Origin: Podarcis gaigeae
Taxonomy: Eukaryota
NCBI GenBank assembly: GCA_964106915.2
Contig: OZ066918.1
Direction: 5' to 3' (one strand)
DNA: 64,000 nucleotides
In this document: positions 21,901 to 63,811 of the stretch, piece by piece
Layout: each line of letters starts with the position of its first letter
Position numbering within the stretch: position 1 is the stretch's first letter
The notes under the pieces: generated by a model
The model's database searches: none
The model's input: the letters and a program-made list of their open reading frames with translations, nothing else
Told to the model about the DNA's origin: nothing
Made by a program: the position numbers and the translations under genes

Positions 21901-24398
21901 TGCTTTAAATGTTGGTGCACCCTTCTTATCCTCTTCTTGCAGCAACTGATTGCTAACTGCTGGATCCTTGCCCAGGTAGAAGAGCTCCTCTTCCAAAAGG
22001 TAGCAAACAAAGCACAAGTCATCTTTCTTGAAACCTATTATTGCACTGACCACCGTATGTGAACTAAGAGAACCTATATACCATTTTCATAAAATAGATT
22101 GGTTTGACATAAAATAAAAAATCCTTTCACATAGCCCAAAGTGAGGCTGCAGAAGTGTTGTGGGAATGCTTTCATTATATGTATACTCTCAAACGCCGCA
22201 GAAAAACCTCTGTCAATGTGGCCTTCTGCTGGAAGAAGAATAACAGCAACTGCCCAGTTTGGTTTGAGCAACAATCATTCACACCTGTCTTGGCAATCAC
22301 CACCTTAGCTAGGAAATTAGAGCCCTGAAACTCTAGGGAAAATGAGAGAAGATGAGACTCATGAACCATTCTAGCAAACAATGTGCCAATAATCGGCATA
22401 CCTAGAAAGTAAATAAGCTTCAGCTTAAATTTTGAACTTGGGCTTTTTATTATGGTTTCAAGCAGCACAGTTCTGTTCTTCTTAAAAGTAAATCACTAGA
22501 CTCCTGAGTTTATTTTATTCAGTCTTCTGAAAGCACTGTAGTGACAATCTAAAACTAAGTCAGAAGTGCTTTCAGTGGGCTTGAACATTGTGTTAGAGAG
22601 TATAGTGTATGTGCTCAAGGGAATTCCTTGGGTATGTGAAAGCCACACAATATTACAAACTATCATCTTGAAAGTGATACTTAAAAATGACATTAGGAGA
22701 CATGGAGAACTATATTTAGAAACGACTGAGCGTGAACTGGCACTGTGCTAAACTAACACACGTTGCACCAAGGCTAACTAAATATCAGGTTTTATATTTA
22801 GCACCGCACCACATTAGAAAAGTATACTGATTACAATGTACCGTATTTTACAAGGTTGTGGGGGGGTTTTTTACATTCTTTATTGGTGACAATGTGGCCA
22901 CCATTTTGTCTAGCTTGTAGAAAACACTGCTGTTATGATAGCTGCTAAACAAATCATTACATTTAAAAGAATCAAATAAAATGATGAAATATATCATTCG
23001 GGTCAGTCGTGCATCATGAAGAGACTAAAATGAAGAGCTCCAGCGTAACATCCCAATTTTAGCTCCTTGTGAAGTAGAAACTGTTGCTACTCTGTCCCAC
23101 AACCAAGCCCAACCCATTGATGAGACAAGGTGAGGTGCTCAGCTAGAGTGCTGGAAGACCAAGGGGCAGCAACTTTCTTGCCTCTGCCGCACACCCTGCT
23201 GCCTCCATCACCAGCAGAGAAGTGGCAGCAGCACTGTTTCCAGTGAAATCTCATTCTGGTGAGATTTTCGTTTCAAGCGGCAAAATGGGGAGCACCACCC
23301 CTGCCCCTGGCACACAGGTTATTACATTTTTAAATACCAATGATAGATAGATGATAGATTGATAGATTTGGAAGCCTTTTTGTAGCAATTAAATATACCC
23401 TAAAGGAACTGGGAGAGGCCACTCGCTGCAAACTAATCATAAACTTCAGTAAGGTCCCTATTTATGTTACCTATGCTAGAAATCATAAACTCTTCGCTGG
23501 AGTCGGCAAAAATGTAGCCGTCCAGATCCTGTTAGACTACCATAATCCCCCATCATTGGCCTTGCTGGCTGTAGCTGATGAGAGTCACAGAAAAGTCACA
23601 GATTCCCTCTCCTGGTTCGACACAGTCAATGGGAATTTTACTTGCTCTGTGAATTTCTACATTAATGAGGAGGGCTCTGCCCGCCCCCTTGTTCCACTCA
23701 CCAGCTCCCGGACAGCTCCACTTGAATTTGCTCTGTTCCAGTGAATCAGGAATGATTCGGATAGAGTGGGGGCACAGCCAGGACTAGGACCAATGAGTTG
23801 GCTGGATGGGAAGCAGGTTCTGTCACTCATTTCTGGCTACTGACAAAGGATTCCTTCCTCACCTCTGCTCACTTCCCAGCCTCTGGGTGATGTGGATTTC
23901 TTCTCCCTCCCCTTCTCAGCTCTACCTTCCCAAGGTGACAACAATCTAGACCCTGCTCTGCCCCAGCATTAGGAGCTCCAGAAATGGTGTAATGACTATC
24001 TAGCGCATACTGTATATACAGTGCATATGTACAGGAGTAGTCAACCTTTTTATACCTACAGCCCACTAATGCATCTTTCTTGATGATAAGATTTCCTTAC
24101 TGCCCACCAGTGCTGCAGTAACATGTGCCATAGAACCCCCTACTGCCAACCTGGAATCCTGAAATGCCTACTAGTGGGCAGCAGGGAACAGGTTGACTAC
24201 CCCTGGTACAGTACATATAACTAAACTCCAGGTGCACTGAAACATTCCATGCTTGTACAGCAATGATAATTGTCAATGTTTTCAGATTTCTGTATTGTTG
24301 CGGCATGGAAAAAGTCAACTTTCACAAGCAACTTTGAAGTTAATATTTGAATTTCCTGGATCTGTGAGTTCTGTTTTAAGTTGTTTCTTCTTCATTTT

Positions 24399-24589
24399 CA
24401 AAACAAAAAAAAATCCTTCCAGTAGCACCTTAAAGACCAACTAAGTTAGTTCTTGGTGTGTATCTGAAGAAGTGTGCATGCACACGAAAGCTCATACCAA
24501 GAACTAACTTAGTTGGTCTTTAAGGTGCTACTGGAAGGAATTTTTTTTGTTTTGACTATGGCAGACCAACACGGCTACCTATCTGTAAC
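24399..24589 (+). mobile_element. Short non-autonomous Penelope-like element remnant (inverted pseudo-LTR configuration)
   Basis: 13-bp TSD tcttcttcatttt at 24386-24398 and 24590-24602. 60-bp inverted repeat 24398-24457 vs 24496-24555 with 1 mismatch. The tail (ggtctttaaggtgcta...gaccaacacggctacc) resembles reptile Penelope pLTR ends as I recall them. Confidence 0.8.
24460..24497 (+). ncRNA. Minimal type I hammerhead ribozyme motif
   Basis: gtat (stem I), CTGAAGA (24464-70), A, GTGTGcatgCACAC (stem II, 24472-85), GAAA (24486-89), GC, TC (UH; predicted cleavage after 24493), atac (stem I). Stem III is reduced to the palindrome AGCT. Confidence 0.75.
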
Positions 24590-24667
24590 TCTTCTTCATT
24601 TTGCACAGGATAATAATAATGTTCAGAAGTACATTTCCATGCAAACTGAAAGTCATTCTTAGCGTTA

Positions 24668-24909
24668 CAGTGGTACCTTGGGTTAAGTACTTAATTCGTT
24701 CCGGAGGTCCGTTCTTAACCTGAAACTGTTCTTAACCTGAAGCACCACTTTGGCTAATGGGGCCTCCTGCTGCCGCCACGCCACCAGAGCACAATTTCTG
24801 TTCTCATCCTGAAGCAAAGTTCTTAACCCAAGGTAATATTTCTGGGTTAGCTGAGTCTGTAACCTGAAGCATATGTAACCTGAAGCGTATGTAACCTGAG
24901 GTACCACTG
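24668..24909. mobile_element. Tc1/mariner (Tigger-like) MITE
   Basis: TA then TIR cagtggtacct...aggtaccactg. Homologous to 63597-63811. Confidence 0.85.
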
Positions 24910-26889
24910 AAATCACCTTAAATGTTAAGCCATATTCTTTCACTACTGAGAGTTATGCTCGAAATATACTGCACAGTCCTTTCTTAAACTCAAGTCAGTT
25001 TGAGTGGAGTTCAGATAGAAAGTGCCACTGTGATCAAGGTTGTGTGTAAAACTGCTGCACAGAAAGCATTATACAGATCTAATGCCATCTTGCTGGATCT
25101 TGATATTTAACAAGAGCGCAGTTATCCTGACAGATCTTCTCTCCCTTTCATTCTTACGGTGTGAATAGCAAGAACCATGCAGGTGGCCCTTCTCAAACAG
25201 TTGGAGTTCCTTCAGGAGATAATGAATGCTGCTGACCTGATCTATTTAAGATAAAATGGGAGCCTTTCAGCCATCACCAGTAGCCTTCTTTTTTCTGACC
25301 TCAAAAGCATCCAGTGTATCCCTCAGCATCCTGTAGCCATTCTCCCTTTTGCTGAAAAAATGTCTTTCCTGTTCATAGCAGATTAAACCTGGAGGAACAG
25401 AGTGGGGGAGAGTGGCCTGTCAAATGCACATCTGAAAGAATATTCCTCCAGAAATCTAGCAGCTGACAGAACCATATGAAAAGTGAGGAAATGCAGCCCA
25501 AGAAAACACACAGGTGGGCTTTAACCACCACAATGGTGAGGCTACATGAAATGCCATAGCTGCAAACTCTGCTGGCTGCTTGCTGATAAAATATTGAGCT
25601 TGTTTACCTATTCCAGGCTGTCTGCCACTTCTCCAGCACAGCATTGCTGATCTGTGTCGCATGCAAGAGCAGGTCTGTGCTCACGCTCTATTCCCAGGAA
25701 GACAGAATCAAAGGCACCATTTTCCCAGCCTTCCTATGTATATAGAGCTTGTTGATTCCATTGATTTTGTGTCAGTTTTTGTGGGGTTCTAATTTAATTG
25801 ATAGTCTTGTAGTTCAGCCCTGGTTTAAAATGGTTCAATCAACTGCTTGCAACATTTATGTCTCTCTGAAATAATTGGCTTCAACATATAAGACCAGAAC
25901 ATTTGAACAAAGCATGAAGATTACCTGCCATAAAAAAGAATTAGAAGAACCTAAGATGGTGGTTTCGGGCAGCTTGTAATAATAATAGTAACAACAACAC
26001 CAAGCATTTATTTAAGAGTTCTCAAGTGTTCAGCTCTGCTTCATATCTCAGGTCTCCTTGGAAATGCCCTTATTTCACAAAGAGATGCTATAAAGTTTGA
26101 GGAGGTTTTCTCATGTAACCTAAGTCCCACAGGCCAAACTCAGAAGTGCAGAGACGTTATTGCCATTAATTTTAGCCTGGTTGCTAGGGTTTTACAGATT
26201 TTGAGGTAATACCACCAGGGAAAATAACATGCTTTTTAAATACTGACATATTAGCTTTAATTTTCAGATGCTGCCTTGGTGTTACAGGATCAACTACACA
26301 AGTATTTGCTTCAGCAATGAATAGATCTCCAAGCTATTTGGATGCTCAGATAGTCCTTTTCTTTTTATTTAAATAATGGATATGTTGTGTATTGACATGG
26401 GAAGCACTGTGTTCATTTAACAAACAACTTAATTAGTATTTTAGGAGTTTTGTGCCATTTGCAAATGAAGACTACAATAATAAAGACTACAGTTAATAAT
26501 GAGCCAGGTCTATCCATTTCAACTGACACAGATCTGAAGTCTAAACTGGTCTCTTTTGAGATTTTCCGTGAACTCTGTCAGTTAAACAGTCTTATCTTAA
26601 GATTTGTTGAGCCACAAAACATTTATTTCTTTATGATTGCAGAGTCTACTCCACAGTTGCTCATGCATTTCAATATGTGGGCCGCTTGGGTGTGCACAGA
26701 AAAATGAATTCACTTTCTTCAGTGCTTCAGAGAGGGGTCCATTTCACTTGAGGCAAGATGTGCCTTGCTTCAGATAAGAAGCAGAACCTCACTTCAGTTT
26801 TCCCAAACCCCTTTGACTGCAATGGACAAATCAACCAATAGTATTTTTTTTATTGCTTGGGAGAATCTGATGGGATTTTATTTGAGGCA

Positions 26890-52165: not shown

Positions 52166-52326
52166 GGGCAAGGAATAGGTCAGTTGGTAGAGCACGAGAC
52201 TCTTAATCTCAAGGTCGTGGTTTCGAGCCCCACGTTGGGCAAAAGATTCTTGCATTGCAGGAGGTTGGACTAGATGACCCTCGTGGTCCCTTCCAACTCT
52301 ACAATTCTATTATTTTATGGTTCTAT
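52166..52326 (+). mobile_element. tRNA-Lys(CTT)-derived SINE with CR1 3' tail, in GLRX3 intron 8
   Basis: The head cagttggtagagcacgagactcttaatctcaaggtcgtggtttcgagccccacgttgggc closely resembles tRNA-Lys-CTT. It is followed directly by the CR1 end ggactagatgaccctcgtggtcccttccaactctacaattctat. Confidence 0.85.
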
Positions 52327-63125: not shown

Positions 63126-63596
63126 CCCTTACAACAGAGGTTCTCTTTTAGAGGACATATGCTTCTGCATACCCATTGCTGGAAAATGCAGGAGGCAAGA
63201 GTGCTATTGCACGCAGCTCTTGGCTTCTAGGCTCCCCATAGGCATCTAGCTGACCACTGTGAGAACAGGAAGCTGGTCTAGATGTGTGACTGGCTCTTCT
63301 CATGTTCTTCATTGTTGGAGATTCACAGCATTTGGGAGGCCTATCAACATTTAAGCTGTCTTAAACCAAGTGAATTTCATGTCACGCATACATGGCGATT
63401 TGTAAGTAGAAACAGCAAGACGGAATGAGCTACTTGAACTTTAAAGAAAACCCGGTGACTATCTGTTGTGAAGATGAAGGGTAATGAGACATTAGGGGTG
63501 AAGAGAGATAAATTAGGAGACCAAAGTCACATTGACATCTTGCACTTTATCCTGAAACTACAAAAAATCAGTACACGTCGATGCAAATTTTCAATA

Positions 63597-63811
63597 CAGT
63601 GGTACCTCAGGTTAAGTACTTAATTCATTCCAGAGGTCCGTACTTAACCTGAAACTGTTCTTAACCTGAAGCACCACTTTAGCTAATGGGGCCTCCTGCC
63701 ACCAGAGCACGATTTCTGTTCTCATCCTGAAGCAAAGTTCTTAACCTGAGGTAATATTTCTGGGTTAGCGGGGTCTGTAACCTGAAGCGTATGTAACCCG
63801 AGGTACCACTG
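63597..63811. mobile_element. Tc1/mariner (Tigger-like) MITE in GLRX3 intron 2
   Basis: TA TSD on both sides. TIR cagtggtacctc.ggtta / taacccgaggtaccactg. Confidence 0.88.

What the first reader, a model, noticed from the sequence alone, without database searches (positions are those of the whole stretch)
24386..24602. Self-contained ~190-bp mobile hairpin carrying an intact hammerhead ribozyme core
Seen: a 13-bp TSD brackets an element made of a 60-bp inverted repeat (1 mismatch). Its loop is almost exactly a hammerhead core: CUGAAGA, a 5-bp stem II (GUGUG/CACAC), GAAA, GC, UC, with stem I GUAU/AUAC. Established: Penelope-like elements carry minimal type I hammerheads whose stem III is only a short palindrome (here AGCU) and which are proposed to cleave as dimers. 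Inference: in a plus-strand transcript the inverted repeat would extend stem I into a ~60-bp helix. The result is a coding-free ribozyme-in-a-hairpin, retrozyme-like unit. The perfect TSD and near-identical arms suggest a young insertion.
Basis: partly seen in the sequence, partly recalled or inferred. Interest (0 to 1): 0.8.

Follow-up and report, generated by a model that had tools for sequence, protein, structure and literature searches.

The report
Fold-back Penelope-type retroelement insertion with hammerhead
This is a young, 191-bp back-to-back fragment of a very abundant lizard Penelope-type jumping gene that carries the family's usual tiny self-cutting RNA motif; this layout is already known for these elements, and nothing shows the hairpin to be a mobile unit in its own right.

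Summary
An exact 13-bp target-site duplication (24386-24398 / 24590-24602) brackets a 191-bp insert. Its inverted arms are 62 nt with 2 mismatches. A complete minimal type I hammerhead core lies at 24460-24497.

The interpretation as a self-contained mobile hairpin is not supported.
- **Repeated unit.** Contigs from three related organisms show that the repeated unit is only the right, sense half (about 24458/24460 to 24554 or 24589/90). It stands at a rough 10^4-10^5 copy-equivalents.
- **Two 3' ends.** The family has two alternative 3' ends, 35 nt apart. This matches the Penelope-like element (PLE) "tail".
- **Arms.** The left arm is an antisense copy starting at the proximal end. The right arm starts at the distal end.
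- **Known layout.** An inverted truncated copy, a tail on one side only and one TSD are the published typical PLE insertion structure.
- **Other fold-backs.** Other fold-back copies have different junctions.
- **Empty site.** A single-copy contig of organism G skips exactly 204 bp, so the insertion is young.
- **Ribozyme fold.** The palindrome does not extend helix I. It is 4 nt out of register, and the ribozyme-competent fold costs +8.6 kcal/mol.
- **Activity.** There is only one hammerhead, so no partner in cis for the dimeric ribozyme. RNA reads show no ends at the cleavage site.

The scan noted similar PLE palindromes elsewhere in this genome. Ordinary; low interest.

The parts
24386..24398 (.). 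Left copy of the 13-bp target-site duplication (TCTTCTTCATTTT)
   Evidence: Identical to 24590-24602. Present once in the empty-site contig of organism G (record 9).
24399..24457 (-). Inverted (antisense) arm. It copies the family's 3' module from the proximal 3' end (equivalent of 24554) inward to the equivalent of 24496. It may run on to 24459, the equivalent of 24494, with one mismatch.
   Evidence: Reverse complement of 24496-24554 with 1 mismatch, 24413/24540. Contigs of organisms A and B run from the unique left flank into this arm with 0 differences (records 1 and 16).
24458..24589 (+). Sense arm: hammerhead plus 3' module plus tail. This is the part shared with the abundant family.
   Evidence: Summed contig word depth is 10^4-10^5 times the flank depth from about 24458/24460 to 24589/90. 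Loose ends before 24458 show a conserved upstream consensus, so family homology starts here (tables 2 and 7).
24460..24497 (+). Minimal type I hammerhead motif: helix I 24460-63/24494-97, CUGAAGA 24464-70, unpaired A 24471, helix II 24472-85, GAAA 24486-89, palindrome AGCU 24489-92, C17 24493, predicted cut 24493|24494.
   Evidence: Read directly from the sequence. Descriptor scan gives 1 hit in the window and 0 in 100 shuffles. No family variant at 10% or more within 24464-24492, and C17 varies only to U, which is allowed (table 3). All four non-descriptor features listed in PMC4209133 are present.
24555..24589 (+). 35-nt 'tail': 3' extension present on the sense arm only
   Evidence: It has no counterpart in the left arm. 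The family has two classes of 3' ends with diverse flanks, at 24553/54 and at 24589/90 (table 7). A 30-40-bp optional tail at one end is a PLE hallmark (PMC8557442, PMC3846280, PMC11167929).
24590..24602 (.). Right copy of the 13-bp target-site duplication
   Evidence: empty site.

Best explanation
The 191-bp insert is one recent, dead-on-arrival insertion of a very abundant lizard Penelope-like (or PLE-dependent, non-coding) retroelement family, in the head-to-head (fold-back) layout these elements often produce.

Most likely mechanism (inferred): the element's enzyme complex nicked both strands of an AT-rich target 13 bp apart, and both free 3' ends primed reverse transcription of family RNA.
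- The bottom-strand primer started at the distal initiation site. This gave the sense arm with its 35-nt tail.
- The top-strand primer started at the proximal initiation site. This gave the antisense arm without a tail.
- The two short cDNAs were then joined at their inner ends (24457|24458), each serving as template for the other's second strand.

The hammerhead is the family's normal minimal motif and was carried along as a passenger. At this locus it is alone, its cleavage site is predicted to be buried in the 62-bp helix, and the hairpin is not expected to cleave or to transpose by itself.

Identity as a PLE-type fold-back insertion: about 0.9. The twin-priming route specifically: about 0.65.
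For: Shown:
- Exact 13-bp TSD and a precise empty site in organism G, with the filled site in organisms A and B. This indicates a single event.
- Only the sense half is the repeated unit, at summed depth 10^4-10^5 times flank depth in three runs.
- The family has two discrete 3' ends 35 nt apart, and the two arms of this locus use one each.
- Other fold-back joints lie at other positions (24441>24511, 24444>16, 24450>24517 and others), each at roughly single- to few-copy depth. Head-to-tail joints also occur (tables 5 and 5c).
- The two arms differ at a homopolymer position where the family shows length variation. This is compatible with two template molecules.

From the literature:
- An inverted 5'-truncated copy next to the unit and a 30-40-bp tail at only one end are typical PLE structure (PMC8557442; PMC3846280, which also reports head-to-head as the most frequent inverted form).
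- The Anolis PLE protein cleaves and extends both DNA strands, starts reverse transcription at two internal sites that define the tail, and prefers AT-rich targets (PMC11167929).
- The distances from the cut site to the two ends here, 61 and 96 nt, resemble those of that element: 82-89 nt for the distal site, counted on its consensus sequence.
Against: - No RT/GIY-YIG ORF of this family was seen. The window has none, and I could fetch no reference copy: two metagenome scans were blank and no paper prints the sequence. The link to an autonomous PLE therefore rests on architecture.
- The central junction itself is not independently confirmed by a listed contig of this exact locus.
- One 80-nt contig at about 3 times single-copy depth spans a similar antisense-to-hammerhead junction, with 4 mismatches and 3 gaps (record 2). 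A few similar fold-backs therefore exist.
- Twin priming versus snap-back cannot be settled from one locus.
- Depth sums from contigs are explicitly not copy numbers. Only one copy occurs in this 64-kb window, so 10^5 may be an overestimate.
Confidence: 0.7

Rival explanations
1. Same kind of insertion, different route. A single cDNA (the sense arm) snapped back on itself and self-primed second-strand synthesis, producing the palindrome. This is the self-priming model proposed for PLE inverted repeats.
For: PMC3846280 infers self-priming from palindromes at inverted junctions. The inner ends can pair over 3 positions, 24458-60 with 24493-95, one of them a G-T.
Against: Snap-back predicts an antisense arm that copies the whole cDNA including the tail. 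Here the arm stops exactly at the family's alternative 3' end, 24554, which would have to be coincidence. The arms also differ at 2 of 62 positions while the TSD is perfect. The priming homology is only 2 bp plus a mismatch.
Confidence: 0.17
2. One reading: the whole 191-bp hairpin is a self-contained, coding-free, ribozyme-bearing mini-element (retrozyme-like) that is transcribed and amplified as a unit.
For: The element is compact, has a perfect TSD and near-identical arms, and carries an intact hammerhead core. One contig at about 3 times single-copy depth crosses a similar junction (record 2). Non-coding PLE-derived retrozymes exist in reptiles, with a mean consensus of 176 bp (preprint 10.64898/2026.07.22.740005).
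Against: Family contigs diverge from this locus at 24458/24460, into a conserved upstream sequence or into diverse flanks. Fold-back joints occur at many positions. No RNA read covers the flanks or the junction, and 1198 of 1199 laid reads run on into other sequence. The hairpin lacks a tail on its left end. The locus has no tandem hammerhead pair, which retrozymes need. The predicted fold buries the cleavage site.
Confidence: 0.05
3. Two independent insertions: a family copy landed next to, or into the end of, an older oppositely oriented copy.
For: PLEs tend to insert into or beside existing copies (PMC6765202; PMC11167929). The arms differ at 2 positions.
Against: One TSD brackets both halves, and there is no internal TSD. 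The empty site of organism G lacks both halves at once and is restored exactly.
Confidence: 0.03
4. A MITE-type DNA transposon with long terminal inverted repeats.
For: Short length, long inverted repeat, flanking direct repeat.
Against: The right end carries 35 nt outside the inverted repeat, so the repeats are not terminal. A 13-bp TSD is atypical for DNA transposons. The half-unit, not the palindrome, is what is repeated in the genome. The content is a PLE hammerhead module.
Confidence: 0.01

Closest known systems
Head-to-head / inverted-pLTR insertions of Penelope-like elements (Evgen'ev & Arkhipova; Arkhipova et al. 2013, PMC3846280; Craig et al. 2021, PMC8557442)
   Same: An inverted 5'-truncated copy abutting the sense copy, a 30-40-bp tail on one end only (35 nt here), one TSD around the whole composite, a hammerhead in the repeated terminal module, heavy 5' truncation and high copy number.
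   Different: This copy is extremely short, 59-62 nt plus 132 nt, with no ORF at all. The family's autonomous partner was not identified here.
Poseidon_Ac (PAc) of Anolis carolinensis, studied in vitro (PMC11167929)
   Same: Same hammerhead architecture: CUGANGA, one unpaired nt, long helix II, GAAA, a 4-nt palindrome in place of helix III, and C17. Two reverse-transcription start sites 30-40 nt apart downstream of the ribozyme. AT-rich target. Both target strands cleaved and extended in vitro, which predicts fold-back products.
   Different: No sequence similarity outside the catalytic core (compared by eye with the consensus). In PAc the ORF starts inside the ribozyme; here the only ATG, in loop II, meets a stop after 9 codons.
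Minimal PLE hammerheads (Cervera & de la Pena 2014, PMC4209133; dimer cleavage by Lunse et al. 2017, as cited in PMC6765202)
   Same: [quoted passage not shown]
   Different: The motif is single at this locus, with no second copy to dimerise with. It is embedded in a 62-bp competing helix.
Metazoan non-LTR retrozymes (PMC7229834; preprint 10.64898/2026.07.22.740005)
   Same: Non-coding, PLE-related repeats with a type I hammerhead. The family shows some head-to-tail joints (table 5c).
   Different: Retrozymes are head-to-tail tandems that yield circular RNAs between two cleavage sites. This locus is an inverted pair with one ribozyme.
Twin priming of LINE-1 (Ostertag & Kazazian 2001; from my own knowledge, not checked here)
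   Same: The second target strand also primes reverse transcription, giving an inverted 5' segment inside one TSD.
   Different: L1 twin priming starts at an internal RNA site chosen by microhomology and gives an inversion plus deletion. Here both primers start at the element's defined initiation sites, which gives a near-palindrome.

Membership tests
Minimal type I hammerhead of PLEs (min-HHR) | Conserved core: C3 U4 G5 A6 N7 G8 A9, G12 A13 A14, A15.1/U16.1, H17 | tested here: met
   CUGAAGA 24464-70, GAA 24486-88, A24489...U24492, C24493.
Minimal type I hammerhead of PLEs (min-HHR) | [quoted passage not shown] | tested here: met
   A24471 is unpaired. G24472-C24485 closes a 5-bp helix II with loop CAUG. 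The feature list is from PMC4209133.
Minimal type I hammerhead of PLEs (min-HHR) | Palindromic segment in place of helix III, allowing an intermolecular helix III in a dimer | tested here: met
   AGCU at 24489-92 is self-complementary.
Minimal type I hammerhead of PLEs (min-HHR) | Helix I able to form in its RNA context | tested here: inconclusive
   A 4-bp helix I exists (24460-63/24494-97). In the hairpin transcript, however, the ribozyme-competent fold is 8.6 kcal/mol above the MFE, with P(24463-24494) about 3e-5. This is a secondary-structure model only.
Minimal type I hammerhead of PLEs (min-HHR) | A second copy in the same transcript or nearby for dimeric cleavage | tested here: not met
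   Only one motif in 64 kb on either strand.
Minimal type I hammerhead of PLEs (min-HHR) | Self-cleavage at C17 | tested here: inconclusive
   Family-level RNA reads of organism H show flat depth across 24493/94 and no pile-up of molecule ends (tables 2 and 6). A standard RNA-seq library is a weak test. Biochemistry cannot be done with these tools.
Canonical hammerhead families of Rfam (type I/III, HH9, HH10, II) | Match to a curated covariance model | tested here: not met
   No hammerhead hit at gathering score in the window or at E<=10 on 24350-24650. The only hits are palindrome-driven miRNA-model hits below their gathering scores.
Penelope-like element insertion, head-to-head form | Inverted 5'-truncated copy directly adjoining the sense copy | tested here: met
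   Arms 24399-24457/60 (antisense) and 24458-24589 (sense).
Penelope-like element insertion, head-to-head form | 30-40-bp tail present at one end only, corresponding to two alternative RT start sites | tested here: met
   The 35-nt tail 24555-24589 is on the sense arm only. The family has 3' ends at 24553/54 and at 24589/90 with diverse flanks (table 7).
Penelope-like element insertion, head-to-head form | One TSD around the composite; a single insertion event | tested here: met
   13-bp TSD. The empty site in organism G skips exactly 204 bp (record 9).
Penelope-like element insertion, head-to-head form | Family includes, or depends on, an element encoding a PLE reverse transcriptase and GIY-YIG endonuclease | not testable with these tools
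   No such ORF in the window. No other copy could be fetched. Earlier scan notes report GIY-YIG ORFs ending in hammerheads in this genome, but I could not check that they belong to the same family.
Metazoan non-LTR retrozyme | Head-to-tail tandem of units, each with a hammerhead, so that a unit RNA can be excised between two cleavage sites | tested here: not met
   Single hammerhead, inverted rather than direct arrangement.
MITE (non-autonomous DNA transposon) | Inverted repeats at both termini, directly inside the TSD | tested here: not met
   The right terminus has 35 nt outside the inverted repeat.

The most novel reading that the evidence does not exclude
The inner junction may record the templates' 5' ends. 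Under one of two equally parsimonious alignments, the antisense arm ends exactly at the equivalent of A24494, which is the predicted 5' end of a hammerhead-cleaved RNA. Under the same alignment the sense arm starts at 24460, the family's 5'-end hot spot. If fold-back junctions genome-wide pile up at the cleavage site, such palindromes would be natural fossils showing two things: that PLE hammerheads cleave in vivo, and that cleaved RNAs serve as templates in two-strand target-primed reverse transcription. Neither has been seen directly (PMC11167929 found no cleaved ends in RNA-seq).
Probability: 0.12. Interest if true: 0.5.

Novelty: new member of a known kind. Interest (0 to 1): 0.2.

Why it matters
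As a single locus it matters little. It is one more truncated copy of a very abundant retroelement family, in a layout described for PLEs since the 2000s.

It has modest value as a clean, dated natural example:
- the TSD is perfect;
- the empty site is still present in a relative;
- the two arms start at the two different RT initiation sites.

This agrees with the 2024 in vitro result that a lizard PLE enzyme cleaves and extends both target strands. A census of such fold-backs in this genome could test that model in vivo, and could test whether hammerhead-cleaved RNAs are ever used as templates.

Tried and rejected
- **Rfam at gathering score** **and at E<=10 on the locus**: no hammerhead family. 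The only hits are to miRNA precursor models (mir-559, mir-3688 and others), on both strands and below their gathering scores. I read these as an effect of the long palindrome, not as miRNA genes.
- **Other copies in the window:** none, by pattern search with 3 mismatches and by sensitive blastn.
- **Fetching independent copies:** two metagenome scans, one with a 22-mer of the ribozyme and one with a 24-mer of the 3' module, were both blank.
- **Literature:** full-text search for four strings of the element found no paper. Lunse et al. 2017 (PMC5785218) is not held, so it is cited only through the review PMC6765202.
- **Earlier scan notes:** search by sequence was blank.
- **Coding content:** Pfam on the ten longest ORFs of the window found nothing, so neither a host gene nor a PLE ORF could be named.
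- **Snap-back at the helix II palindrome as the origin of the fold-back:** rejected. That palindrome is centred at i+j=24957 and the arms at 24953 (worked out).
- **MITE reading:** rejected (non-terminal repeat, 13-bp TSD).
- **Assembly artefact:** unlikely. Independent contigs of two organisms cross the left junction without a difference, and the empty site matches the TSD exactly.
Full report
**1. What is in the sequence**

TCTTCTTCATTTT occurs at 24386-24398 and again at 24590-24602, and brackets a 191-bp insert, 24399-24589.

Inside the insert, 24399-24460 is the reverse complement of 24493-24554. That is 62 nt with two mismatches, 24413/24540 and 24458/24495. The right arm continues for 35 nt (24555-24589) that have no counterpart on the left. 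As RNA the insert folds into one long hairpin: -109.7 kcal/mol, z = -17.3 against shuffles.

The hammerhead elements lie between and across the inner ends of the arms:
- helix I GUAU/AUAC, 24460-63 / 24494-97
- CUGAAGA, 24464-70
- one unpaired A, 24471
- helix II GUGUG/CACAC, 24472-76 / 24481-85, with loop CAUG
- GAAA, 24486-89
- GC, 24490-91
- U16.1 and C17, 24492-93

A descriptor written for this architecture finds this one site in the window on either strand, and none in 100 shuffled windows. Rfam's curated hammerhead models do not detect it, either at gathering score or at E<=10. That is expected for a motif with no helix III hairpin. The only Rfam hits are palindrome-driven matches to miRNA precursor models, below their thresholds.

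**2. The motif is the known Penelope-type minimal hammerhead**

Cervera and de la Pena (PMC4209133) described minimal type I hammerheads in the terminal repeats of Penelope-like elements (PLEs). They listed four features that were not part of their search descriptor:
- the G10.1-C11.1 pair
- a palindromic 15.x-16.x segment
- a short helix I

All four are present here. The Anolis element Poseidon_Ac has the same architecture with a different sequence (consensus read). According to PMC4209133 and the review PMC6765202, such motifs do not cleave as monomers, cleave weakly as dimers, and probably need other factors. For Poseidon_Ac, cleavage needed the element's protein (PMC11167929).

**3. What public reads and contigs say**

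I laid Logan contigs of three organisms (coded A, B and G) and raw RNA reads of a fourth (H) on 24270-24690, at 90% likeness or better.

(a) *Empty site.* In organism G, a 326-nt contig at single-copy depth lies on 24270-24385 and runs on without a break into 24590-24690. It skips exactly 204 bp, which is the insert plus one TSD copy. Its flanks differ from the window at 7 of 217 positions. Contigs of A and B run from the unique left flank into the left arm with no difference. The insertion is therefore real, bounded as described, and younger than the split from G.

(b) *Abundance.* Summed contig depth over about 24465-24584 is 4-5 million against 39.8 in the flank (A), about 2 million against 8.4 (B), and 7-10 million against 122 (G). 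The tool warns that this is not a copy number, and the window holds only this one copy. I therefore read it as roughly 10^4-10^5 copy-equivalents.

(c) *Where family homology starts.* It starts at 24458/24460.
- Before 24458, many contigs, and 300 RNA reads at 0.92 agreement, continue into one conserved upstream sequence.
- Before 24460, 48-59 contigs per run continue into diverse AT-rich sequence. This marks a hot spot of 5' ends.
- None of this matches the left arm of this locus, so the arm junction lies at 24457|24458. An alternative alignment puts it at 24459|24460 with one mismatch.

(d) *Two classes of 3' ends.* The family has two classes of 3' ends with diverse flanks, at 24553/54 and at 24589/90.

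(e) *Other arrangements.* Other contigs join the antisense arm to the sense arm at other positions (24441>24511, 24441>24521, 24444>24516, 24450>24517 and more), each at about one- to few-copy depth. Head-to-tail joints, for example 24552>G>24460, also occur.

(f) *Conservation.* Within 24464-24492 no family variant reaches 10%, while the following 62 nt have ten variable sites. C17 varies only to U, which a hammerhead tolerates.

(g) *RNA.*
- About 94 reads per million lie on the family, in both orientations in equal numbers.
- Depth is flat across 24493/94, and no place is reported where molecules begin or end.
- No read lies on the unique flanks.

So the family is expressed in organism H. 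There is no evidence that this locus is expressed, and no sign of cleavage, though a standard library is a weak test.

**4. What it is**

PLE insertions are described as heavily 5'-truncated. They often have an inverted 5'-truncated copy directly adjoining, and a 30-40-bp 'tail' at only one end of the unit (PMC8557442). In rotifer PLEs the typical structure is flanked by one TSD, with the tail on one of the inverted repeats, and head-to-head is the most frequent inverted form (PMC3846280).

The present locus has each of these features in miniature. The repeated unit in the genome is the half, not the palindrome. I therefore read it as a single fold-back insertion of a PLE-type family, not as a self-contained hairpin element.

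The link to an enzyme-encoding PLE is by architecture only. I could fetch no second copy and found no PLE ORF in the window. The family could equally be a non-coding, PLE-dependent derivative of the kind now called animal retrozymes.

**5. How it probably formed (inferred)**

The purified Anolis PLE protein has three relevant properties (PMC11167929):
- it cleaves and extends both strands of an AT-rich target;
- it is predicted to be a dimer;
- it starts reverse transcription at two internal RNA sites, whose spacing equals the tail.

At this locus the left TSD copy is followed directly by cDNA-sense sequence that begins at the proximal end. The right TSD copy is preceded by the sense sequence ending at the distal end. 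That is what priming from both nicked strands would give, followed by joining of the two short cDNAs at their inner ends.

The two arms differ at a homopolymer position where the family shows length variation, which is compatible with two template molecules. The distances from the predicted cut to the two ends are 61 and 96 nt. The distal site of Poseidon_Ac lies 82-89 nt from its cut (counted).

The rival route is snap-back self-priming (PMC3846280). It would copy the tail into the inverted arm, and would not be expected to stop at the family's alternative 3' end. I give it about 0.17.

**6. The ribozyme at this locus**

The palindrome does not prolong helix I. The arms pair in register i+j=24953 and helix I in register 24957. 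Forcing the ribozyme-competent secondary structure costs +8.6 kcal/mol. In the predicted ensemble C17 pairs with G24460 with probability 0.99, and the first helix I pair has probability about 3e-5.

The locus also has only one hammerhead, so the dimeric form that these helix-III-less motifs are thought to need cannot form in cis. I expect this copy to be catalytically silent. That is a prediction, not a result.

**7. What remains open**

- The inner junction can be read in two ways. In the first, the antisense arm runs to the equivalent of 24496 and the sense arm starts at 24458. In the second, the antisense arm runs to the equivalent of 24494 and the sense arm starts at 24460. The second places the end of the antisense arm exactly at the predicted 5' end of a cleaved RNA, as another first-stage note on this stretch suggested (s1-695046).
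- At family level, however, 5' ends before 24494 are not among the best-supported classes, whereas 24460 is. Use of cleaved templates is therefore at most occasional.
- Why 24460 is a hot spot is unexplained.

**8. Verdict**

The mobile-hairpin interpretation is not supported.

The scan has already noted many PLE palindromes and hammerheads elsewhere in this genome. Two follow-ups there reached the same kind of verdict. I could not check those loci.

It is a new member of a known kind and of low interest.

Noticed in passing
window 24460 (family level, table 7): Many family copies (48-59 contigs per run) have their 5' boundary at 24460, the first base of hammerhead helix I, with diverse AT-rich flanks that often end in AG. 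No comparable class starts at the predicted cleavage product end, 24494. The cause is unknown (RNA 5' end, RT stop or joining preference).
   Followed up: partly
upstream consensus of the family, abutting window 24458 (table 7, runs X1, X2, X12, X23): The conserved sequence that precedes the hammerhead in longer and expressed copies ends in a pyrimidine-rich stretch plus CAG, which looks like a 3' splice site right at the 5' end of helix I. This recalls the intron end reported at that position in D. virilis Penelope (PMC4209133). Not tested.
   Followed up: no
window 24655-24900 and 63595-63801: A different interspersed repeat lies 50 bp downstream of the insertion, with a second copy in the window at 89% identity. 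Its summed contig depth is a few hundred times flank depth. It contains a 14-nt direct repeat at 24711/24728 and a 16-nt tandem at 24858-24899.
   Followed up: partly
window 52176-52233 (+): Rfam tRNA match at 29.7 bits, just above the gathering score of 29. It covers model positions 8-63 only, so it is probably a tRNA-derived SINE head or a pseudogene.
   Followed up: no
window 24416-24537, both strands: Rfam E-value mode gives matches to mir-559 and mir-3688 precursor models (E about 1e-12 to 1e-10), below their gathering scores. They reflect the long perfect hairpin. If this locus were transcribed, it would be a plausible substrate for small-RNA processing, but no RNA read covers its flanks.
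   Followed up: partly
window, whole: The ten longest ORFs have no Pfam domain, so the window looks non-coding (intron or intergenic). It contains 497 N, which were left alone.
   Followed up: partly
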